A stretch of 64,000 nt of DNA, from NCBI RefSeq assembly GCF_006345805.1, contig NC_042998.1, positions 133,362,001 through 133,426,000 on the forward strand, given 5' to 3'. The translations under genes were made by a program, and so were the position numbers. Positions 2,772 to 61,515 of this stretch are shown here, piece by piece (within the stretch, counting starts at the first letter, position 1; each line of letters begins with the position of its first letter). Source of the DNA: Octopus sinensis (lineage: Eukaryota). The notes beneath the pieces were generated by a model. The model was not told the origin of the DNA. It worked only from the letters and a program-made list of their open reading frames with translations, and did not search any database.

Positions 2772-4043
2772 CAGGGTGGAGCAGAGAGGACAGACGTTTT
2801 TCAAATGGTTATTACTCTGCCCCAGGGAGAGGGACATATGTCCCAAAGGTACCATTCAGTCCATGGTATCTTAACATTTTTTCTTTTAAGTGAAGCATTG
2901 GTGCTGTGAACGATAGAACATCACATGTTTGCCTACGGCAGTTACGTGAAGTGTAACGAGTCTCTCACAGCAGTTCAGTGTGAGTCTTGGCGCTACTTCA
3001 ACATTCACCGAAATCAGGCTGTTCCCACCCGTAATACAATCTTACGTTGGGTGAATGCACTTCGTGGGGGCGCCACGAACGGTACAGATCCCGGAAAATG
3101 TGGAACGCATCATACAAGCTTATATACGGAAACCGAATTGCTCCGTTCGGAGGCATTTCACTAAACCTGGCATTGGTAATCGATCGGTAAGGCGTATTTT
3201 GCATGAAGACCTTAATTTCCATCCCTACAAATTGGTCATTGGGTAACAGTTGAAACAATAGCATGATGCACCGCGGCTTAACTTCGCACGTCAGGCAAAT
3301 GGCAACCTCATTTTGTTAATGAGTGATGAAGCTCATTTTCATCTAAATGGCATAGCGAACTCAGAGAACTGTCGTTATTGGGCTCTTGAAAATCCGAGAG
3401 AACTGCACGAAAGACCACTGCTCACCCCAAAAGTGACGGTCTGGTGTGCTGTTGGAAAAGCAGCCATCATTACTTTTTTGAAGACAATCATGGAAATTCT
3501 GTCACTGTGAACTCCAAGCATTACATCGAGATGATAAACAACTTCTTTGTGCCTGAATTACAACGAAAACGTATACCTATTCGACGTGTGAGGTTTCAGC
3601 AGGACAGCCCACACAGCCAGAGCATCAATGGACGTTCTTCACCCTCTCTTCGGTGACCGCCTCATCTCCAAATTTGCAGACATACCTTGAGCTACTAGCT
3701 CCTTCGATTTGTCCATGTATGATTATTTTTGTGAAGAAACTTCAAGGCACGGGGATATGCGTATAATACCCGTACATTGGACGATTTGAAGGAAGCTATT
3801 GATGTGGAAGTTGAGACCAAATCGATAGAGCAATGGTGGAGAAATTGAAAGCCAACATCCAAGGATGCCTTCAGAAATGCATCAATGAAAATGGACACCA
3901 CATGTTGGATATTGTTTTCCACTCATGCTTTTCACAAATGCTAATTCAATACGAACAAATTGACGTCAATAAAATTTGTTTGCAGCTAAAATTTATGATT
4001 TTGTGAACTTTTCAAAAATGTCCGTCCTCTCTGCCCCACCCTG
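2772..4043 (+). mobile_element. Full-length (1272 bp) decayed Tc1/mariner transposon, rosa/DD41D type
   Basis: 30-bp TIRs (2772-2801 CAGGGTGGAGCAGAGAGGACAGACGTTTTT and 4014-4043, 3 mismatches); TA target duplication at 2770-2771 and 4044-4045. Confidence 0.93.
2895..3925 (+). pseudogene. Frameshifted mariner-family DDD transposase
   Basis: Fragments VPTRNTILRWVNALR, MSDEAHFHLNG..N.ENCRYWALENP, KVTVWCAVG, FQQD..TAHTARASMDVL...DLSMYDYF; 41 residues between the 2nd and 3rd D once an inferred 8-nt deletion is restored. Confidence 0.88.
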
Positions 4044-6582: not shown

Positions 6583-7194
6583 TGTGTGATATGTGTCTGT
6601 TGCTGTTAATGTTGTATAGGTCAGCCCTGCCCGGGAGTGAAGTAACGAGAGTAATGATGCGCCTGCCTGTTTTTCGCATATCTTATATTCTATTTTCATT
6701 TCATTGTAGCGGAAAGATTATTGGATTCAAATTATGATAATGATAGGGTGAGTTGCAATGGTACTGGTTGTACGTAAGGTTACCGCCGTTGTCATCTACT
6801 TTTTATTTTCATCTCATATTATGCCGTGTGTATATATAGTTACTGTTATTGTCCGGGTAGCTGTATATATTAGTGATAGATATAGTTTGTAATCGTTTAC
6901 AACGGTATAAGTCGAAGTACATAATGCTACAAACGTTAGTCTGTGGAATGTTGGGCTAATAAAACAAACCTCTTGAAGTTTCCAAATTATTAAGACGTAA
7001 GTATTACATTTTGTGTTCAGAATGTATAATTCGTTAAATATATTATATACTGCTTTAATGACGAAATATATTGATAAATCAACTAACGAATACGTGGTCT
7101 ACAACCAATATGTTTGATTTGACTGGTAGAATGGGCCTCCCGAAATACAGTAATGTCTGTTTCAAAGCTGGCACAAACGCAAGCGCGCCGAACA

Positions 7195-7375
7195 AGTGCT
7201 TAGCTGCATTTCGTCCGTCTTTACGTTCCGAGTTCAAATTCCACTGAGACCAACTTTGCCTTACGTCTTTTTGGTGGTTGATAAAACAAGTACCAGCTGA
7301 GCACTGGGGGTCGATGTTATTGATTTAACCCTCCCCCGAAATTGCTGGCCTTGTGCCAAGATTTGAAAACAATAA
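7195..7375 (+). mobile_element. tRNA-derived SINE (family A), 5'-truncated
   Basis: B-box GAGTTCAAATTCC, body ...AAGTACCAGCTGAGCACTGGGGGTCGATG, tail GGCCTTGTGCCAAGATTTGAAA. Confidence 0.8.
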
Positions 7376-8789: not shown

Positions 8790-9480
8790 GAGAAGCACGA
8801 CTGAGCGCCCTCGCGTCGTTTCGTTTCGTTTCCTCCAAGTAAGTTTTTATATATAATTATGACGCGAAACACTATAACCCTTTGCTTGACCTTCCCTTCC
8901 TTCCTTGTCTTCCTCTATCTCTCTCTCAATCCTCATCTCTCTCACATCCGCTTGTCTTCCTCTATCTCTCTCTCTCTCTCACTCCTCCTCATCTCTCTCA
9001 CAGCTGGGCGACTACTTCCTTTCGCTTGCGGCCTCCTAACAGTGAACACGCTTTCTTCTTGCGCTCTTAAGAATCTTTCCTCGTCTAGGCCTAAAGGCCC
9101 TCAATGTTTGTTTTCTTTTTTGTTTTTATTTCTTGTACTGTATTTTTTTGTAATTGTATTTTTATTTTGTATTTTATTTTGTAATTTTATTTCTATCGTT
9201 TTTACGTCCTGTTTTTGTCACATTTTTTTCTTTCCTTGATTTTACCCCTCTGCGGGGGAATTTTATTTAATTCTTTCGCAAGAAGGGCTAGTTCGACGAG
9301 TCGTGTTCTGTCCTCACCTTCGAAACACGCATGGAGTCGTACTAGGGACAGCTGATGAAGGGGAATTGTTGTTTGTCTTGTACTCTGTTTTTTCGTTGTT
9401 AAAATTAAGGTCCGTTTCCATGTTTGTTTTTTACGTTTTCGTTTCTCGTTGAGTTCTACGTTCATTTGTGGTGTCCTGTA
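8790..9480 (+). mobile_element. Unclassified repeat-like segment resembling a Penelope pseudo-LTR or retrozyme-like non-autonomous element
   Basis: No ORF; pyrimidine-rich; donor-like CAA|GTAAGT near 8838; internal duplication of a ~45-bp CT-rich unit; contains the permuted hammerhead. Family assignment is inference. Confidence 0.35.
9288..9363 (+). ncRNA. Candidate non-circularly permuted (pseudoknotted) hammerhead ribozyme
   Basis: CUGAUGA 9352-9358; GAAA 9322-9325; GUU cleavage triplet 9305-9307; stem I 9308-9313/9346-9351; stem III 9302-9306/9325-9329; stem II 9318-9321/9360-9363; extension helix 9288-9297/9336-9345. Confidence 0.7.
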
Positions 9481-9539
9481 CTCACGTATATATATTTATA
9501 TAAGCATGTATATACACATGTAGATGTAGGTACGTACAT

Positions 9540-9578
9540 ATATGTATGTATGTATGTATGCATATATTTTATTTATTA

Positions 9579-9642
<64 letters not shown>

Positions 9643-9719
9643 CAGTATTCCTGCATGACCGCAGTCAGATGACTGAAACAAGTAACATAATAAAAGAATA
9701 TACATATATTCTTTTATAC

Positions 9720-10745: not shown

Positions 10746-11407
10746 ATGTAAATAGACAATGATGTGGAGTGAAGAAAAAATTTAGAAAGAAATAATTAGA
10801 TTGAATATATTTAACAACCTTCAAAAGGCGTTGTATTTGTATGAAGGTTGTGGTGTCATTTGAATAAACTAGTGTGTTTTGATTAGATGAGATTTCATTT
10901 GGCGGTGTTTAGACCGTCGCCATGTTGTTTAAATAATTATCTTCATTAATGCGCTCACACTCGCAAACACCCTGACACCTACATTCGCACCTAAATACAT
11001 AAAAGTTTGCATAACATACACATACGAACAAAGCAAAAACACACAGATTTATGTGTATATGTATATATAAACACACACTCACACACACATGCGATCACAC
11101 ATATGTGCGTATTCATATATATATATATATGCATGTATGTGCGGATTAATAATGTTTCAGTGGAAGGATATCTGCTTTCTATGTGGCTCATTGGAGGACC
11201 AGGTTATGATCTTTCACAAATCTATTTACCACGCTAATGAACTTAGTATATTTAATGCATAAACACAGTGGTCTGTATATAAACACAGCTGACAACCTTG
11301 TTTATTTTTTTCCTTTTGCAAGTATGTGTGTGTGTGTCTGTGTGTGTGTGTGTGTTAGTGTAATTCTATTTCACACTTTCACTAATTCTGTAACTCTATA
11401 CCTCTAT

Positions 11408-11410
11408 ATG

Positions 11411-11495
<85 letters not shown>

Positions 11496-11499
11496 TTAC

Positions 11500-11563
<64 letters not shown>

Positions 11564-11567
11564 TTAC

Positions 11568-11639
<72 letters not shown>

Positions 11640-11695
11640 ATATCTATCTGTCTGTCTGTCTGTCTGTCTTCTCTATGTGTGTGTGTGAGTATGTC

Positions 11696-13933: not shown

Positions 13934-14386
13934 ATATTTCTTTACTACTCACAAGGGGCTAAACACAGAGGGGACAAACTAGGACAGACAAACGGATTAA
14001 GTCGATTACATCGACCCCCCAGTGCGTAACTGGTCCTTAATTTATCGACCCTGAAAGAATGAAAGGCAACGTCGACCTCGGCGGAATTTGAACCCAAAAC
14101 GTAACGGCAGACGAAATACGGCTACGCATTTCGCCCGGCGTGCTAACGTTTCTTATTTCTTTACTACCCACAAGGGGCTAAACACAGAGAAGTCAAACAA
14201 GGACAGACAAACGGATTAAGTCAATTATATCGACCCCAGTGCGTAACTGGTACTTATTTAATCGACCCCGAAAGGATGAAAGGCAAAGTCGACCTCGGCG
14301 GAATTTGAACCCAGAACGTAACGGCAAACGAAATACGGCTGCGCATTTCGCCCGGCGTGCTAACGTTTCTGCCAGCTCGCCGCCTT
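13934..14386 (-). mobile_element. Head-to-tail SINE family A dimer with one 14-bp TSD
   Basis: Two near-complete units; GTCGGAATTTATAT at 13920-13933 and 14387-14400; A-box TGGCAGAAACGTTAG and B-box GGGTTCAAATTCC. Confidence 0.92.
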
Positions 14387-16489: not shown

Positions 16490-17183
16490 CATCCACAGCC
16501 CCTAATAGACAGTGCAATCCAACGAGCACTTAAATTAAGTATAGAAGACCTGGGGCAACCAAAACTAAAAAAGAAAGAAAAATTAAAAACCCTACCCTAC
16601 ATCTCTACACACAACCCACTTAACAATGAGGCCTTCATCACCATACTCCAAAGATGAACCGAATCCTCCAAACGTACACCATCATTAAAAGTAAACGGCA
16701 ACCAAAATCCTGAAAAAAGATTTTAACCCAAGCTAAACTGCACTCAACAACAACCAAAAATCAGCAGTTAGAAAATGTGGAAAGTCCAACCGCGGAATCT
16801 GTTTCATCTTAGTAGAAGGTTCAGAATACACATTAGAACAAGACCATCATTTTACCATCAGAACAAACTTCCCCTGTGCATCAGAAAACTTAATTTATGT
16901 GTTATCATGCGCAAGGTGCAATAGGCAATATATAGGCCATACAAAAAACAGCCTATGAAAAAGGATGGCAGTTCATAAATCCCAAATTAGGAATCCTGAA
17001 TACAGGAAAATACCTGTCAGCGGACACATAGATAGATGTGCTTCAAATAAAAATCCCAAATTCACATATTTACCACTTTACCAATTCAGTAACAACGTAA
17101 CGTTCACTCAACGTCAAAATAAAGAATTCTATTTTATTAGAAAATTCGGACCAAGTTTAAACACCCTAGGCCAGGAACATTAG
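16490..17183 (+). pseudogene. PLE C-terminal linker and GIY-YIG endonuclease, decayed
   Basis: TLPYISTHNP...KRQP...VRKCGKSNRGIC...FPCASENLIYVLSCARCNRQYIGHTKNSL*KRMAVHKSQIR...FIRKFGPSLN. Confidence 0.88.
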
Positions 17184-18351: not shown

Positions 18352-18868
18352 AGGGCTAAAAACCACTAGGTGGTCAGCCGTATGCTAGAAGTAGATCCCC
18401 TACGATCAAACTACAAAGAAAAGAATGTTCTCTAGAAGAAAATTCAGCGGACACCAGAACAATATGCGGGCAAGACAGATGAAAATTATATAAAAACCAG
18501 TTTGTTTCCGGAATTTTAGCGCGCCAGAGCTCAGACGTTTGAAATTAACCCCAATGTAATCGGTGAAATTAAGCACATGTCTGTTTTTATACGGAAAACT
18601 GGTGGTTAGTTTTACAAATTATATTACCTGTGGAACGATCGCACTGACGAGCCTACGGACGAGGGATTACATAAGTGATTCATTCGTTAATAGGCGAAAC
18701 CGCCGGTCTGTGAGTAATTCTGTTTTTTATATAATTTTCATGTCTTGCCCGCATTTTGTTCTGGTGTCCGCTGAATTTTCCTCTAGAGAACATTCTTTTC
18801 TTTGTAGTTTGATCGTAGGGGATCTACTTCTAGCATACGGCTGACCACCTAATGGTTTTTTTAGCCCT
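18352..18868. mobile_element. MITE with ~150-bp near-perfect TIRs, Kolobok-like
   Basis: Termini AGGG...CCCT; TTAA on the right flank (18869-18872); left flank is AAAA (imperfect). Confidence 0.8.
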
Positions 18869-22589: not shown

Positions 22590-23095
22590 TGGTTACAACG
22601 ATTACATCGATCCCAGTTTTCAAGTGGCACTTATTTTATCGGCCTCGAAATGGAGAAAGGCAAAGTTGACCCCGGCTGAATTTGACCTCAGAACATAAAG
22701 ACACATGAATGCCGCCAAACATCCTGCGTGCTAACGATTCTGCTTACTCACCGCCTAATGATAATCTAAATCTATTATTGGTTTTAAATTTTGACACAAG
22801 GCCAGAGATTTTGAAGGGTGAGGGCTAAGTCGATTAGATTGACCCCCCAGTGCTTAACTGGTACTTATTTTATCGACCCGATAAGATGAACGACAAAATC
22901 GACCTCAGCGGAATTTAAACTCGGAACATAAAGACAGATGAAATCCCGCCAAGCATTTCGGCCGAAATGCTAACGAGTCTACCAGCTCATCGCCTTTCTT
23001 ATAACTGTATATTTTTGAAAGACAGAGTTTACCTCAACAGATTTTGAACTCGAACGTTCGAAACCGGAGCAAATAGTGCAAAGAACATTTCTGAT
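22590..23095 (-). mobile_element. Tandem cluster of 2-3 family A SINEs
   Basis: Units at ~22595-22760 and ~22790-22997 plus a degenerate third. Confidence 0.75.
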
Positions 23096-34535: not shown

Positions 34536-34896
34536 CCTAGGACAGCGAGCTGGCAGAATCGTTAGCAGGCTGGACGAATTGCTTAGCGCTATTTCGTCTG
34601 CCGTTACGTTCTGAGTTCAAATTCCACCGAGGTCGACTTTGCCTTTCATCTTTTCGGGGTTGATTAGATAAGTACCAGTTACGCAGTGGGGTCGATATAA
34701 TCTACTTAATCCGTTTGTCTGTCCTTGTTTGTTCCTTCTGTGTTTAGCCCCTTGTGGGTAGTAAAGAAATAGGTATTTCGCCTGCCGCTACGTTCTGAGT
34801 TCAAATTCCGCCGAGGTCGACTTTGCCTTTCATCCTTTCGGGGTCGATAAATTAAGTGCCAGTTGAATAAAAGCTGCCCCTATGGCAAAATTCAAA
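34536..34896 (+). mobile_element. Head-to-tail SINE family A dimer
   Basis: Full unit followed by a 5'-truncated unit starting GGTATTTCG; ATTATTATTAATTTAATT at 34518-34535 and 34897-34914 as a probable TSD. Confidence 0.88.
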
Positions 34897-37269
34897 ATTA
34901 TTATTAATTTAATTGCTTCAATTCTTTTTGAGACTACTTAAAGCTTTTTGGTTCATATTTTGAACTATATTGAAAAATAGTCTTTAAAAAAAAATTCTGC
35001 TATACTCTACGTTTCTTAATGAAGGCAATATATAGGAGAGGGTGCTGAAACATTTTTGGTTTGGAGTAAAAGAAAATACAGGAGAATCAGTTAATTAAAA
35101 TACTATTCAACATATTCCCCTCTCAGAATTACATGCTTATTTCAGCAGTCCTTCGGTTTTTCTAGGCCCTGTAAGAGAACTCGAAAGGTAAGGCCTTCAA
35201 CTAGGCCTTTCACTATACCCTTAAAGTCACCAACTTTTCAGTGCCCCCTCGTATGCTAGGCTTTACCATTATGTTTCTACCTGAAGCATTTGCATGTTGC
35301 ATCTGATATGTTGATGTCTGTCTATATTTATTTTTAAAAAGATGTGTTTCTTCACGACCTAATTAAAAAATACGTTCAGTTTTTTTTTTATATTATTTCA
35401 TTATTGCACTCACAGTTGAACAAAAATTATAAGCTAAACTTTCTATGATTCCTTACAAATTTTTGCAAATATAGATTTGTTGCATATATTTGATCTGGAA
35501 TTCAGTCTTGATTTAATGATCTGCCAGAAATTTCCAAATAAGATTTAGATTTGGATTCTATCCAGGCCAAAACAAAGTCTTAATTTTATGCTAATGGGCT
35601 ATTTTTTTCGACTAATTTGGCAGAATGAGCAAGATCATAATTATCTTGGTGTATTGCCAGTCTGGTTTGAATTAAGCTTTCCTATAATGGGGCAGAAGTT
35701 GCTTTTGAAAATGTCTTAAATAACATGAGTAACACTTCCATTGCAAAAGTATGTATCATCCAACACCTTAACTTCTAGAACATACGTCATTTCAAATTGT
35801 CACGAGCTAAAAAATTTGCTTGTCTGTTGTATGCAATCTTTCTTGAAATTTTTTAATTAATCTTCTTAAAGATTCAACGGAGGCAATATATGGTAAGAAA
35901 TCGAAAGTAGTGTCTTTACAAAGTTAAAAATAACATACTGCCATCAATGTTTCTTCCGCATTTTCTCTTCGTTTTTGATATTTATAACTTGAGTTAAACT
36001 GTAAGTTGCAAATTCGTTTTGGCATTTTTAATGATGCGACAGGATATATTGATTTCGTCCCTTGTGAGAAAGTCTTTGAAAATAAAATATTTATCTGTTT
36101 TTGTCACGAAAGGCTAGTTGTTTTTGTTTTTGTGGGATGATATATTTTCTGGATATTAACTCTTCTTTCTTAGTTTTCATATGTAAGCTGGTTCATGGAA
36201 ATCTAATTTTATTTCATTTGCCTCGTTTTTGACGGCCCTGCAGCTACCGACATCATTATAAAATGATAGAATCATTCTTTTATTGGTATTACACAAATGT
36301 CTAATTCTTTTAGAAGGAGCCATCATGCATGAAATAAACAGAAATCTTGCACTGTGAAATTACCTAAAACTATTAAAGATATATACCAAACGTTAATGAA
36401 AAAGTAGTTTGCACTCAAATTTTAATTAAATCTAAAATAAAATAAAGAAACAAAATTGAAGCGAGCGAAGAAAAACTGAAATGATGGATTAAAAATAAGA
36501 AAATTCAAATTTAAAAGAAGTATCACATGACCAAAGTAATTAAATTATGACAAGAAAGCCAGATCCCTACTGTGAATTTTTGGTTTCTGCTAAAAGTAAT
36601 CAAGAAATATTTTATGCCACGCTGTGCACTCACACACACACATACACACACACAAACACACACGCATATATATGTATATATATATTTCTTTGTGCGGATA
36701 TATGTATGCACATGTACATATGTATGTATGTGTGTGTTTCTGATATGTACTTATATACATAAAATAATGTGTGTGTGTTTGCGTGTATGAGCGTAATATG
36801 TATATGTGTAAGCATTGGTTGTTGCTTGTAAACGTCAGCAATTATGGAAAAATGGCTTGAAGGAAAAATGGGACTGATCGCCCGAAGGAGTGAAGCAGAG
36901 AGAATTGAGGAAAAGCAATACTGAAAAAACTGAGTGTTGTAAAGGAGATTAACTAGAATAGGATTGTTAGTGTGAGGTACGGAAGTGCTATTAATGAGAG
37001 CGAACACACGCACCTCTCATACAAATTTCTACTCATCTGTCTTAAACCATTTCTCTTAGATGTACAGATAGCGTATTGGAACACAAGTCATTAGATATAT
37101 CATTTAGAAGTCAATATTTTCAAAATGCTATTTTGCAGTTTAAAATATTGCACAAAATTGATTATAATTAATTATTCCATTTTTTACGTGTCAGTTCGTT
37201 TCTATTTTAGTATTTGATTCGGACATACAGACATATAGAACCCATATTTACACACACATTTATGAATTT

Positions 37270-37329
<60 letters not shown>

Positions 37330-37333
<4 letters not shown>

Positions 37334-37795
37334 GTTCGCGGGAGAGTGAGGTCGCACGGACAGTCATCTCTATAACGGCCGTATAGTTCGAGAGTGGGAT
37401 CAGTGAATCGTGAGAAGATTTGGGCCTCAACATAGCCAACGAACAGGTTCGCATAGCTGAGGTCCATTCTCGTTCCCATGGCCACTCCCGAGAGTGTTGA
37501 TAAAAATCCCCCGCAAACAAGAAGTAGTTGAGAGAGAGAACACGTTCGGCAAGATGAAGAGGTGTGGAGGTGTTCGGTTGGGGAGTTGGTCGTAGGTCCA
37601 GAAAGTGTTAAAAAGTCGGAGAGCATGGTTAGTGTTGTGCTTGTGGGGGAAGCCATTAGGGGAGCAAAGGCGCGGTCAAGGTATTTAGAGATCAATTCCG
37701 TAGGGCAGTTATAGGCGGAGACGATGGGGCGGCCAGGATTGAGGGGCTGGTTGATTTAGGAAGGAAGTAAATGGGAAACGCGTGAAGTGCGATAC
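37330..37795 (-). pseudogene. Penelope-like reverse transcriptase fragment
   Basis: YFLPK...[26 protein letters not shown]...GVAMGTRMDLSYANLFVGYVEAQIF...YGRYRDDC; embedded between (TA)n arrays. Confidence 0.88.
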
Positions 37796-48630: not shown

Positions 48631-48744
48631 CAGGCATGCCTGCACCTTCTTACTGTGTACTTCATCTCCCTGTAGTCGATAATATAAAGCACCAAGAGTT
48701 GTGGTTGAGGAAATCTATTAACCCAAACCATCTTGAATGTCTGT

Positions 48745-49194
48745 GGTAAGCTGGCAGAATCGTTAGCACGCCAGGGAAAAAGCTTAGCGGCATTTCGTCC
48801 ATCTGTATGTTTTTAGTTCAAATTTCGCGCAAAGGTGACTTTACCATCCTTTCGGGGTCGATAAAAGAAGTACCACTTGAGCACTGGGGTCGATGAAATT
48901 GATCATACCGCTTCCCCGAAATTTCTGGCCTTGTGCCAAAATTTGAAACCATTATTATCATTATTGTTGGTGATGTTGTTATCAATTCAGCGAGATAGCA
49001 GGATCACTAGCACACCGAGCCAAATGCTTAACAGCATTTCGTCCACCTTTGCGTTCTGACTTCAAATTCTGTCGAGATCGACTTTGCATTTAATCTTTTC
49101 CGTTTCGATGAAATAAGTACCATTTGAACACTGGAGTCGATGTAATCGACTAGTCTCCTCCTCCATAATTTCAGTTGTGCCTTTAGTAGAAAGG

Positions 49195-49274
<80 letters not shown>

Positions 49275-49485
49275 AGGCAGCGAGCTGACGAAATCTGAAG
49301 CATTCTGTACAAAATGCTTAGCGACATTTCTTCCGTTTTGACGTTCAAATCTCACCGAGGTCGACTTTACCTTTCATTCTTTTGAGGTCGATAAAATAAG
49401 TACCAGTGAAGCACTGGGGTCAATATAATCAACTTTTCATCCCCCAAAATTGCTGGCCTTGTGCCACAATTTGAAATCATTATTA
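48745..49485 (+). mobile_element. Array of three head-to-tail family A SINEs with (ATT)n spacers
   Basis: Units at ~48745, ~48985 and ~49273. Confidence 0.85.
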
Positions 49486-51659: not shown

Positions 51660-52430
51660 GTCTGAATAAAACAACATGCAATTTAATACAGAAAAATCTC
51701 CAAATTCCGCTATCAGCTTCCTTATGCTAACATGCCGCAACGAAGACACTTTGGACCAAAAGGAGCAGCAATTACTGAGTCAAATACTGTACTTGATCTG
51801 GGGATTGCTATTATCAGCAACAACGTTTGTTTTTCATGTGTATATTCGAAGATGGTGCCATGTGCTGGCGAATAGCCAGATGGATTTTGAGAACTTTCAG
51901 AACAAGAAATATGAAATTATGCTGGCTCTATTTGAAGATTTCTATCACTGGAACAGCTAAGCTGCTGGAGAGGCTATAAGGGCTACGTGTCAATTCTCTG
52001 GAGCGAAGACAGGAGAGGTATGCAATGATATATACGTATGAAAGATCCTTTGATATCGAGAACTACATTGTTCTGAAGGTCAATGGACGTCAATACACCG
52101 TTTCAAATATCCATCGCTATTCCATCTAGTGTAATGAACATATACTGCATTAACTTGGAATTAAGAGCTCGCGGTTATTTAATACATTGCAAAACCATCT
52201 GAGAGCTCTACATGGAATGGGGTCGATATTTTCAAGAAACAACTTGACCTCCTGCTGTCCAAGGTCCCAGATAAACATATGTCACAGCAAGAATTCAAAG
52301 GCGTTCAATGATATCGAACTCATACATTCGTCAAAAGCCAATCACAAAAGAATGGCCATTGGTAAGGTGATAACTGCTGTGGTGCCCCAGCTTGTCCACA
52401 GCCTTTGGGCTGAAACGCATAAGTAAATAA
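51660..52430 (+). mobile_element. CR1/L2-group LINE 3' fragment, copy 1
   Basis: NNMQFN...DLGIAI...RIARWILRTF.TR...SLERRQERYA...SRLFNTL...VDIFKKQLDLLLSKVPD across frameshifts. Confidence 0.75.
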
Positions 52431-53584: not shown

Positions 53585-54360
53585 CTGAATAAAACAACAT
53601 GCAATTTAATACAGAAAAATCTCCAAATTCCGCTATCAGCTTCCTTATGCTAACATGCCGCAACGAAGACACTTTGGACCAAAAGGAGCAGCAATTACTG
53701 AGTCAAATACTGTACTTGATCTGGGGATTGCTATTATCAGCAACAACGTTTTGTTTCATGTGTATATTACGAAGATGGTGCCAATGTGCTGGCGAATAGC
53801 CAGATGGATTTTGAGAACTTTCAGAACAAGGAAATATGAAATTATGCTGGCTCTATTTGAAGATTTCTATCACTGGAACAGCTAAGCTGCTGGGAGAGGC
53901 TATAAGGGCTACGTGTCAATTCTCTGGAGCGAAGACAGGAGAGGTATGCAATGATATATACGTATGAAAGATCCTTTGATATCGAGAACTACATTGTTCT
54001 GAAGGTCAATGGACGTCAATACACCGTTTCAAATATCCATCGCTATTCCATCTAGTGTAATGAACATATACTGCATTAACTTGGAATTAAGAGCTCGCGG
54101 TTATTTAATACATTGCAAAACCATCTGAGAGCTCTACATGGAATAGGGGTCGATATTTTCAAGAAACAACTTGACCTCCTGCTGTCCAAGGTCCCAGATA
54201 AACATATGTCACAGCAAGAAATTCAAAGGCGTTCAATGATATCGAACTCATACATTCGTCAAAAGCCAATCACAAAAGAATGGCCATTGGTAAGGTGATA
54301 ACTGCTGTGGTGCCCCAGCTTGTCCACAGCCTTTGGGCTGAAACGCATAAGTAAATAAAA
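53585..54360 (+). mobile_element. CR1/L2-group LINE 3' fragment, copy 2 (in the duplication)
   Basis: Near-identical to 51660-52430. Confidence 0.75.
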
Positions 54361-59312: not shown

Positions 59313-60147
59313 ATACAAACACCTGTACGATAATATGTGGTGTGTTAGGATAATATACACGGGCGAACCTTTTGTACAGACGCTGTAATGCTTGTCAACC
59401 TAAGTTTCTGTTAGCACCTCTGACAGTCTAGGCGCTAAATTTTTCTGTTATTTAATTATTTTGAGACAGGTTTTATTGCAAAGATATGTTTCCTAGGTGA
59501 TAAATATACCTTTGTAATTTAATAGGCGATGTATATATATAAATATACTCGGATGTGTGTGTGTGTGTGTGTGTGGGTGTTTGTGCATGTGTCTGTTTAT
59601 ATGCGTGTGCGTGTGTGAGTCGATATCAGAGAGAAACATACATAATAATAATGATGATAATATTAATAATAATAATCCTTTGTGCTATAGACACAAGGCC
59701 TGAAATTTTGAGCGTGGGGTGGGCTGATGAAAGGAATCCTAAAAAAGAGACCGAGAGCACGATATTAGAAGCGCAAGGCCAAGCTTGGCCGCGAACTGGG
59801 GAATCAACCTTCGGAATGTGCAAGAGTCTCCGCTGTGCTGCATCTATAATAGAGTAAATGAAACCATTGCCCATGTCACAAACGCATGCCATTATCATCA
59901 TCATCATGATGACCATGATGATAAGGATTTTAAAAAAATTAAAGATACCATATAGCACATAAATACAAACTAATTGGGTGAGTCACAAAGCATGGCAGAA
60001 GAACCGGTTACATAAAACGAGCGGAGGGTTAAAAGACGTTATACAATTGAATACAGGGACAAATTGTTTTTTTTTTAAATTGTGAAAAATATAAACGCAC
60101 AAAGATTACATAAACATACTCCTTAATTGAACAAAATATAATTTAAA

Positions 60148-61037: not shown

Positions 61038-61515
<478 letters not shown>

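What the first reader, a model, noticed from the sequence alone, without database searches (positions are those of the whole stretch)
9288..9363. Hammerhead ribozyme with scrambled (non-circularly permuted) strand order forming a pseudoknot
Seen in sequence: every catalytic element is present. Core CUGAUGA is at 9352-9358, GAAA at 9322-9325 and the GUU cleavage triplet at 9305-9307. Stem I is CUGUCC 9308-9313 with GGACAG 9346-9351 (6 bp). Stem III is CGUGU 9302-9306 with ACACG 9325-9329 (5 bp). Stem II is CUUC 9318-9321 with GGGG 9360-9363, after one extra A. The three junction strands run in the order [III'-UH-I] > [II'-GAAA-III] > [I'-CUGAUGA-II]. Established knowledge: types I, II and III are the three circular rotations of the opposite order, so ordinary hammerhead searches would miss this arrangement. 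From memory, natural non-circular permutations have been reported only recently and rarely; I cannot tell whether this family is among them. Inference: the RNA folds as a long hairpin whose loop is invaded twice by the 3' tail. The 3-4-nt linker from stem I to stem II fits, because the distal ends of these stems are adjacent in the folded hammerhead.
Basis: partly seen in the sequence, partly recalled or inferred. Interest (0 to 1): 0.93.

Follow-up and report, generated by a model that had tools for sequence, protein, structure and literature searches.

The report
Probable chance match to permuted hammerhead
A 62-base stretch of what looks like octopus DNA carries every core element of a hammerhead self-cleaving RNA in the rare "type SGC" scrambled order published in 2023, but it is a single unsupported copy with a very weak stem II, and matches this good are expected by chance many times per genome, so it is most likely fortuitous.

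Summary
The block order, cleavage site > GAAA > CUGAUGA, is a true non-circular permutation.

The arrangement is not new. It is the "type SGC" hammerhead of Eckert et al., NAR 2023 (PMC10085705). That type has the same short stem I-to-stem II linker, and the published sequences read here also carry one extra base after CUGAUGA.

Evidence that this copy is a working ribozyme is poor:
- Stem II (GGGG/CUUC) has about 0 kcal/mol. A competing register (GAAGG/CCUUC, -4.6 kcal/mol) buries core bases G8 and A9.
- The fourth helix, seen in every published sequence I could read and needed for cleavage in SGC-3, is absent.
- There is no other copy in the window, no Rfam hit, no hit from a model built on published sequences, and no match in any searchable collection.
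- An equally good match turns up in about 0.6% of shuffled 64-kb windows in any order. The rate is 0.1% for the SGC order and about 0.01% with the published spacing. That implies a few to hundreds per 2-3 Gb genome.

Conservation in other cephalopods could not be tested. I judge it a fortuitous match (about 0.85). Weak cleavage in vitro remains possible.

The parts
9302..9306 (+). Stem III 3' strand, CGUGU. U9306 is U16.1 and pairs with A9325.
   Evidence: Sequence; descriptor hit; duplex energy with 9325-9329 is -4.3 kcal/mol.
9307..9307 (+). N17 = U (GUU triplet). Predicted cleavage lies between U9307 and C9308.
   Evidence: Sequence. U17 also appears to occur in published HRIMA-1 rows (my parsing of machine-read alignment rows).
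9308..9314 (+). Stem I 3' strand, CUGUCC(U).
   Evidence: Pairs with 9345-9351: 6 Watson-Crick pairs plus 1 G-U, -9.6 kcal/mol.
9315..9317 (+). Linker of 3-4 nt from stem I to stem II (CAC, or UCAC if U9314 is unpaired).
   Evidence: Sequence. The published type SGC typically has a 3-nt linker. In the alignment it is collinear with SGC-1, -2 and -3.
9318..9321 (+). Stem II 3' strand, CUUC.
   Evidence: Pairs with GGGG 9360-9363 as G-C, G-U, G-U, G-C. Duplex energy is 0.0 kcal/mol.
9322..9325 (+). Conserved GAAA (G12, A13, A14, A15.1).
   Evidence: Sequence.
9326..9329 (+). Stem III 5' strand, CACG.
   Evidence: Four Watson-Crick pairs with 9302-9305.
9330..9344 (+). Spacer between block G and block C. 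[quoted passage not shown]
   Evidence: The best duplex with 9364-9400 is -6.3 kcal/mol. It is not adjacent to the stems, and 55% of shuffles do as well.
9345..9351 (+). Stem I 5' strand, (G)GGACAG.
9352..9358 (+). Conserved CUGAUGA (C3 to A9).
   Evidence: Sequence. It is one of 26 CUGANGA sites in the window; 23.5 are expected.
9359..9359 (+). Extra A between A9 and G10.1.
   Evidence: Sequence. In the published SGC sequences read here this position is filled (U in nearly all rows).
9360..9363 (+). Stem II 5' strand, GGGG.
9357..9361 (+). Competing pairing of GAAGG with CCUUC 9317-9321. It sequesters G8 and A9.
   Evidence: -4.6 kcal/mol against 0.0 for the active stem II register.
9288..9345 (+). 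Nested alternative fold. CUAGU 9288-92 pairs with ACUAG 9341-45, CGAC 9294-97 with GUCG 9336-39, and CGUGUU 9302-07 with AACACG 9324-29. The last helix pairs N17 with A14.
   Evidence: RNAfold minimum-free-energy structure, -27.4 kcal/mol, z = -0.36, no better than shuffles.

Best explanation
The site is a fortuitous, unselected match to the hammerhead core in the SGC block order. It lies in low-complexity, repeat-rich, non-coding DNA that is probably from an octopus. The sequence could in principle fold into the doubly pseudoknotted type-SGC hammerhead and might show slow Mg2+-dependent cleavage after U9307 in vitro. It most likely has no biological ribozyme function. Shown here: the elements are present, the chance rates, the helix energies, and the absence of copies or detectable relatives. 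Inferred: lack of function.
For: Chance rate:
- Matches of equal stringency occur in 0.63% of shuffled windows in any order, 0.11% as SGC, and 0.0125% as SGC with the published spacing (600-shuffle pilot).
- Permuted-core decoys on the real window hit at about 0.7% per descriptor.

Structure:
- Stem II has 0.0 kcal/mol. The competing register scores -4.6 kcal/mol and buries G8 and A9.
- No helix joins stems I and II. The best candidate is no better than shuffles. That helix is in every published row I could read, and disrupting it abolished cleavage in SGC-3.
- Folding energy is no better than shuffles.

Relatives:
- No second copy in the window.
- No Rfam match.
- A covariance model built from published HRIMA-1 sequences does not find it at E <= 10 with filters off.
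- No matches in the viral, metagenome or prokaryotic genome collections.

Literature: Eckert et al. searched RefSeq with SGC descriptors and found no supported example in any known organism. They expected false positives and rejected candidates that lacked covariation.
Against: - For this single window the match is improbable (p about 0.006 down to 0.0001, depending on how narrowly the hypothesis is framed).
- Several details agree with validated type-SGC ribozymes beyond the bare core: a 3-4 nt linker, one extra nucleotide after A9, and stem I / linker / stem II lengths of 6-7 / 3-4 / 4, almost the same as SGC-3's 6 / 3 / 4.
- Stems I and III are solid.
- Conservation in related cephalopod genomes, the decisive test, could not be run.
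Confidence: 0.85

Rival explanations
1. It is a genuine, selected, genome-encoded type-SGC hammerhead ribozyme. A transcript through 9290-9365 folds into stems I, II and III as a double pseudoknot and cleaves after U9307. Possible roles are processing of an intronic or non-coding RNA, or of a mobile-element transcript.
For: - The core is complete and correctly spaced.
- The architecture is collinear with validated SGC ribozymes, including the short linker and the extra nucleotide after A9.
- The chance rate for that specific architecture is about 1.25e-4 per window.
- Hammerhead-bearing retroelements do exist in invertebrate genomes, and the window holds Penelope-like element remnants.
Against: - Stem II is very weak and a stronger inactive register competes with it.
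- The site is a single copy with no detectable relatives.
- No type-SGC ribozyme was found in any known organism's genome when RefSeq was searched.
- The prior is far below the chance rate.
Confidence: 0.05
2. It is a decayed relic of a once-active permuted hammerhead carried by a mobile element or an integrated circular-RNA-like sequence. It has lost its fourth helix and part of stem II.
For: - It is a GC-richer island (about 9250-9365) between T-rich repeats and microsatellites.
- Penelope-like elements are reported to insert preferentially into microsatellites.
- Remnants of such elements are in the window.
Against: - The flanks show no similarity to any other part of the window, including the element remnants.
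- No coding remnant lies nearby.
- The canonical hammerhead motifs of Penelope-like elements are, from memory (Cervera & de la Pena 2014, cited), type I, and published type-SGC ribozymes come only from environmental samples, mostly metatranscriptomes.
Confidence: 0.06
3. The functional unit, if there is one, is the ordinary long hairpin at 9288-9345 or some other non-ribozyme element, and the hammerhead-like core is incidental.
For: The minimum-free-energy fold of 9288-9390 is a nested hairpin built from CUAGU/ACUAG, CGAC/GUCG and CGUGUU/AACACG.
Against: The fold is no more stable than shuffled sequence (z = -0.36). There is no Rfam or tRNA match.
Confidence: 0.04

Closest known systems
[quoted passage not shown]
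   Same: - The block order is identical: cleavage site, then GAAA, then CUGAnGA.
- All invariant core nucleotides are present.
- Stems I, II and III cross one another as pseudoknots.
- The stem I-to-stem II linker is 3-4 nt.
- There is one inserted nucleotide between A9 and G10.1.
- Stem lengths are close to those of the validated SGC-3.
   Different: [quoted passage not shown]
- Stem II is 4 bp with two G-U pairs, against 5 GC-rich pairs in HRIMA-1.
- The stem I sequence is unrelated to the invariant AUGUU/AACAU of HRIMA-1.
- The inserted base is A, not U.
- It is not detected by an HRIMA-1-derived covariance model.
- It lies in animal genomic DNA, whereas published examples come only from environmental samples (mostly metatranscriptomes), none from the genome of a known organism.
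- It is a single sequence with no covariation data.
GCS-1, the lone type-GCS hammerhead candidate in Caballeronia peredens (same paper)
   Same: It is a single genomic sequence that fits a non-circular permutation descriptor and has no covariation support. This shows that a lone descriptor match can cleave in vitro and still be of unclear biological meaning.
   Different: The block order differs (GCS against SGC). GCS-1 has a strong GACC/GGUC stem II and no inserted nucleotide.
Classical type I, II and III hammerheads (Rfam RF00163, RF02276, RF00008)
   Same: The catalytic core and the three-stem logic are the same.
   Different: The strand order is not a circular rotation of the classical one. 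Rfam models give no match even at E <= 10.

Membership tests
Hammerhead ribozyme (any topology) | Conserved core: CUGAnGA, GAAA, U16.1 paired to A15.1, and H17 (not G). | tested here: met
   CUGAUGA 9352-58, GAAA 9322-25, U9306-A9325 and U9307.
Hammerhead ribozyme (any topology) | Three helices (I, II, III) flank the core, with a G10.1-C11.1 closing pair and a stable stem II. | tested here: inconclusive
   Stem I (7 bp, -9.6 kcal/mol) and stem III (5 bp, -4.3) are sound, and G9360-C9321 is present. Stem II scores 0.0 kcal/mol and is out-competed by a -4.6 kcal/mol register that pairs G8 and A9.
Hammerhead ribozyme (any topology) | Site-specific, Mg2+-dependent self-cleavage 3' of N17. | not testable with these tools
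   Needs in vitro transcription and a cleavage assay.
Type-SGC hammerhead (Eckert et al. 2023) | Block order S > G > C, with a short (typically 3-nt) linker from stem I to stem II. | tested here: met
   The order is SGC. The linker is 3-4 nt. The site aligns collinearly with SGC-1, -2 and -3.
Type-SGC hammerhead (Eckert et al. 2023) | One inserted nucleotide between CUGAnGA and stem II. This is my observation from the published sequences; the authors do not state it as a criterion. | tested here: met
   A9359 is the inserted base. The published sequences carry U at this position.
Type-SGC hammerhead (Eckert et al. 2023) | A fourth helix joins the outer ends of stems I and II. It starts directly 5' of the stem I strand and 1-3 nt 3' of the stem II strand, and it is required for cleavage in SGC-3. 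| tested here: not met
   No adjacent helix exists. The best duplex between 9330-9345 and 9364-9400 is -6.3 kcal/mol, lies 16-18 nt away, and is matched by 55% of shuffles.
Type-SGC hammerhead (Eckert et al. 2023) | Covariation support from homologues (the authors' acceptance criterion). | not testable with these tools
   No homologue could be retrieved. No cephalopod genome is searchable here.
HRIMA-1 lineage (homology) | Sequence and structure profile match, including the invariant stem I AUGUU/AACAU. | tested here: not met
   Model R1 was built from 20 published sequences. It does not report 9296-9366 at E <= 10 with filters off. Stem I here is CUGUCC/GGACAG.

The most novel reading that the evidence does not exclude
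This is the first non-circularly permuted (type-SGC) hammerhead ribozyme encoded in the genome of an animal, or of any known organism. It would act on an octopus transcript, and would show that the permutation is not confined to environmental circular-RNA-like agents.
Probability: 0.04. Interest if true: 0.75.

Novelty: not a real feature. Interest (0 to 1): 0.2.

Why it matters
If it were real, it would extend non-circular RNA permutation to animal genomic DNA. So far that permutation is known only from about 580 environmental RNA sequences, plus two type-CSG sequences from environmental samples and one doubtful bacterial (type-GCS) case. It would also imply that standard hammerhead annotation misses a class of ribozymes in eukaryotic genomes.

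As things stand, its main value is as a caution. A complete hammerhead core in any of six block orders is a low-information pattern, with about 0.6% of random 64-kb windows matching. Single hits therefore need covariation or cleavage data before they count. The published type-SGC work used the same criterion.

Tried and rejected
- **Rfam.** The gathering scan of the whole window gave 0 hits. The E <= 10 scan of 9000-9700 found no hammerhead, only low-complexity "miRNA" matches on microsatellites at 9480-9650.
- **A hidden classical hammerhead.** There is no GAAA downstream of CUGAUGA within reach, and tandem classical units cannot produce the order S-G-C. Rejected.
- **Copies in the window.** Mismatch searches, a sensitive blastn and the repeat finder (which reported only microsatellite families) found none.
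- **Relatives elsewhere.**
  - I used the antisense 87-aa ORF that covers the site as a proxy query against 5.8 billion proteins. It found nothing.
  - Exact-product look-ups of neighbouring ORFs and of the Octopus hit found nothing on record.
  - DNA patterns found nothing in the viral, metagenome (two scans) and prokaryotic genome collections.
  - No cephalopod genome is reachable with these tools.
- **tRNA or SINE origin** (a GTTCGA box-B-like word at 9291-9296). ARAGORN found nothing, and I did not pursue it further.
- **Thermodynamic signal.** None.
- **Homology to HRIMA-1.** A covariance model did not detect the site. The model could hold only one of the crossing stems, and some training rows were read by machine from a PDF, so this is an approximate test.
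- **Link to the Penelope-like element remnants in the window.** No sequence similarity, and 7 kb of separation. Rejected.

Full report
**What is in the sequence.**
- CGUGU 9302-9306 and the GUU triplet 9305-9307
- CUGUCC 9308-9313
- CUUC 9318-9321
- GAAA 9322-9325 and ACACG 9325-9329
- GGACAG 9346-9351
- CUGAUGA 9352-9358, one extra A at 9359, and GGGG 9360-9363

In hammerhead numbering:
- Stem III is the A15.1(9325)-U16.1(9306) pair plus four Watson-Crick pairs.
- Stem I is six Watson-Crick pairs plus a possible U9314-G9345 wobble.
- Stem II is G-C, G-U, G-U, G-C.
- The predicted scissile bond lies between U9307 and C9308.

The three junction strands run site > GAAA > CUGAUGA. This is not a rotation of the classical order, so the three stems cross one another.

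**It is a known arrangement.** A literature search led to Eckert et al., Nucleic Acids Res 2023 (PMC10085705).
- The paper divides the hammerhead into blocks S, G and C. It names the classical types CGS, GSC and SCG, and reports a natural, validated "type SGC".
- 583 sequences were found, all in environmental samples (mostly metatranscriptomes). [quoted passage not shown]
- Type SGC has a typically 3-nt linker from stem I to stem II. It also has a fourth helix that ties the other ends of stems I and II together. Disrupting any of the four helices abolished cleavage in SGC-3.
- I reconstructed SGC-1, -2 and -3 from the oligonucleotide tables and read the HRIMA-1 alignment rows. Nearly all of these sequences carry one inserted nucleotide (U) between CUGAnGA and stem II.

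The candidate's 3-4 nt linker, its extra A9359 and its stem lengths (6-7 / 3-4 / 4, against 6 / 3 / 4 in SGC-3) therefore fit the published architecture. It aligns collinearly with those sequences. I found no later paper that extends this type to eukaryotic genomes.

**Is it more than chance?** I wrote a descriptor that accepts all six block orders. It requires CUGANGA, GAAA, UH, stem I >=5 bp, stem II >=4 bp with a Watson-Crick closing pair, stem III >=4 bp plus the A-U pair, 0-1 inserted nt and a span <=150 nt.
- In the real window it finds only this site, on either strand.
- It recovers SGC-1, -2 and -3 as a positive control.

Rates per 64-kb window in 16000 dinucleotide-preserving shuffles (600-shuffle pilot):

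| Class of match | Rate per window |
|---|---|
| Any block order | 0.0063 |
| SGC order | 0.0011 |
| SGC with linker <=6 nt and one inserted nt | 0.000125 |

A second control keeps the real sequence and permutes the core words instead. Of 720 such descriptors, 6 gave a hit, including the true one, so the rate is about 0.007.

The site is therefore unusual for one window. That implies a few hundred chance matches in any order, some tens in the SGC order, and a handful with the published spacing. Eckert et al. expected exactly such false positives and accepted only candidates with covariation. Their lone GCS-1 sequence cleaved in vitro and was still judged biologically unclear.

**Structural quality.** Duplex energies:

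| Helix | Energy (kcal/mol) |
|---|---|
| Stem I | -9.6 |
| Stem III | -4.3 |
| Stem II, GGGG/CUUC | 0.0 |
| Competing register, GAAGG 9357-61 / CCUUC 9317-21 | -4.6 |

- The competing register pairs the essential G8 and A9, so the inactive fold is favoured by about 4.6 kcal/mol.
- Validated SGC ribozymes have stem II at -7.1 kcal/mol (SGC-1 and SGC-2) or -2.1 (SGC-3).
- There is no fourth helix next to block C. The best duplex between 9330-9345 and 9364-9400 is -6.3 kcal/mol, lies 16-18 nt from stem II, and is equalled by 55% of shuffles.
- The minimum-free-energy nested fold of 9288-9390 is an ordinary hairpin that also pairs N17 with A14. It is no more stable than shuffles (z = -0.36). The 71-nt core scores z = +1.37.

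**Context and relatives.**
- The window is about 35% GC and dense with microsatellites and transposon debris.
- A GIY-YIG endonuclease remnant at 16737-17180 (Pfam PF01541) has as its only named hit an Octopus bimaculoides protein, at 77% identity.
- The candidate sits in a GC-richer island between T-rich tandem repeats (9111-9196) and TA/TG microsatellites (9497 onward).
- There is no convincing coding sequence, tRNA or Rfam family nearby.
- No other copy exists in the window.
- The antisense ORF that covers the site has no relative among 5.8 billion proteins. Nearby ORFs are not on record.
- Relaxed DNA patterns are absent from the viral, metagenome and prokaryotic genome collections.
- A covariance model built from 20 published HRIMA-1 sequences does not report the site at E <= 10 with filters off. 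The site is therefore not a relative of that lineage; at most it is a convergent instance of the same architecture.
- Cephalopod genomes could not be searched with the tools available. The decisive conservation test remains open.

**Verdict.**
- The kind was already published in 2023.
- This instance fails one feature that was shown to be required in SGC-3 (the fourth helix) and has a very weak stem II with a stronger inactive competitor.
- It has no copies or detectable relatives, and it is within what chance gives at genome scale.
- No type-SGC hammerhead has been found in the genome of any known organism. The prior for a real one in a given window is therefore well below even the narrowest chance rate.
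- I put about 0.85 on a fortuitous match, which might still cleave slowly in vitro.
- I put about 0.05 on a genuine functional ribozyme, about 0.06 on a decayed relic, and about 0.04 on some other element.

**Seen in passing.** The window also holds a classical type I hammerhead-like motif at 18638-18714. It has a 3-bp stem III and a 1-nt loop, which I recall as the architecture of Penelope-like-element hammerheads. It lies between 138-nt inverted repeats and 1.5 kb downstream of the GIY-YIG remnant. It passes only the loose descriptor and scores E = 7.9 in Rfam, so it is plausible but unproven.

Noticed in passing
window 18638-18714 (+): A classical type I (CGS) hammerhead-like motif: CUGACGA 18644-50, stem II GCCUA/UAGGC with a 35-nt insert, GAAA 18696-99, stem III CCG/CGG with a 1-nt loop, U18707-C18708, and a 5-bp stem I. 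The very short stem III is, from memory, the architecture of Penelope-like-element hammerheads. It passes only my loose descriptor (chance rate about 0.12 per window), and Rfam gives only E = 7.9.
   Followed up: partly
window 18358-18495 and 18723-18860: A 138-nt inverted repeat, 92% complementary, flanks the 227-nt spacer that holds the type I hammerhead-like motif. Inverted truncated copies are described for Penelope-like elements (PMC8557442).
   Followed up: partly
window 16737-17180 (+): A GIY-YIG endonuclease remnant (Pfam PF01541, E = 3e-6). Its only named hit is an Octopus bimaculoides uncharacterised protein at 77% identity. This points to a Penelope-like retroelement remnant and to an octopod source genome.
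   Followed up: partly
window 37210-37755 (-): A stop-free 182-codon stretch carries a motif that looks like reverse transcriptase by eye (GVAMGTRMDLSYANLFVGYVE). There is no Pfam hit at E <= 0.01.
   Followed up: partly
window ~2900-3900 (+): Frameshifted ORF pieces look like a mariner/Tc1-type transposase remnant (DEAHFHLNG...). The one fragment tested gave no Pfam hit at E <= 0.01.
   Followed up: partly
window 7150-7375, with copies at 48736-48954, 22775-22958, 14213-14377, 34548-34712 and 49312-49482: A dispersed repeat of about 200 nt at 73-77% identity, present in both orientations. It is probably a SINE-like family.
   Followed up: no
window 51670-51957 and 53593-53882 (also 52154-52423 and 54080-54295): Two stretches about 1.9 kb apart give near-identical translations (NNMQFNTEKSPNSAISFLMLTCRNEDTLDQ...). 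This suggests a local tandem segmental duplication.
   Followed up: no
window 9480-9650: Rfam matches to mir-297, mir-3149 and mir-1277 (E down to 3e-5, far below gathering scores) fall on TA / TATG microsatellite. They are low-complexity artefacts.
   Followed up: yes
window 59702-59830 (+): A loose-descriptor match in GCS order (stem II 3 bp, span 136 nt). It is at the level expected by chance.
   Followed up: no
window 11314-11669 and 61047-61402: Long 'inverted repeats' of up to 356 nt are TCTA/TAGA-type microsatellite arrays in opposite orientation, not a structured element.
   Followed up: no
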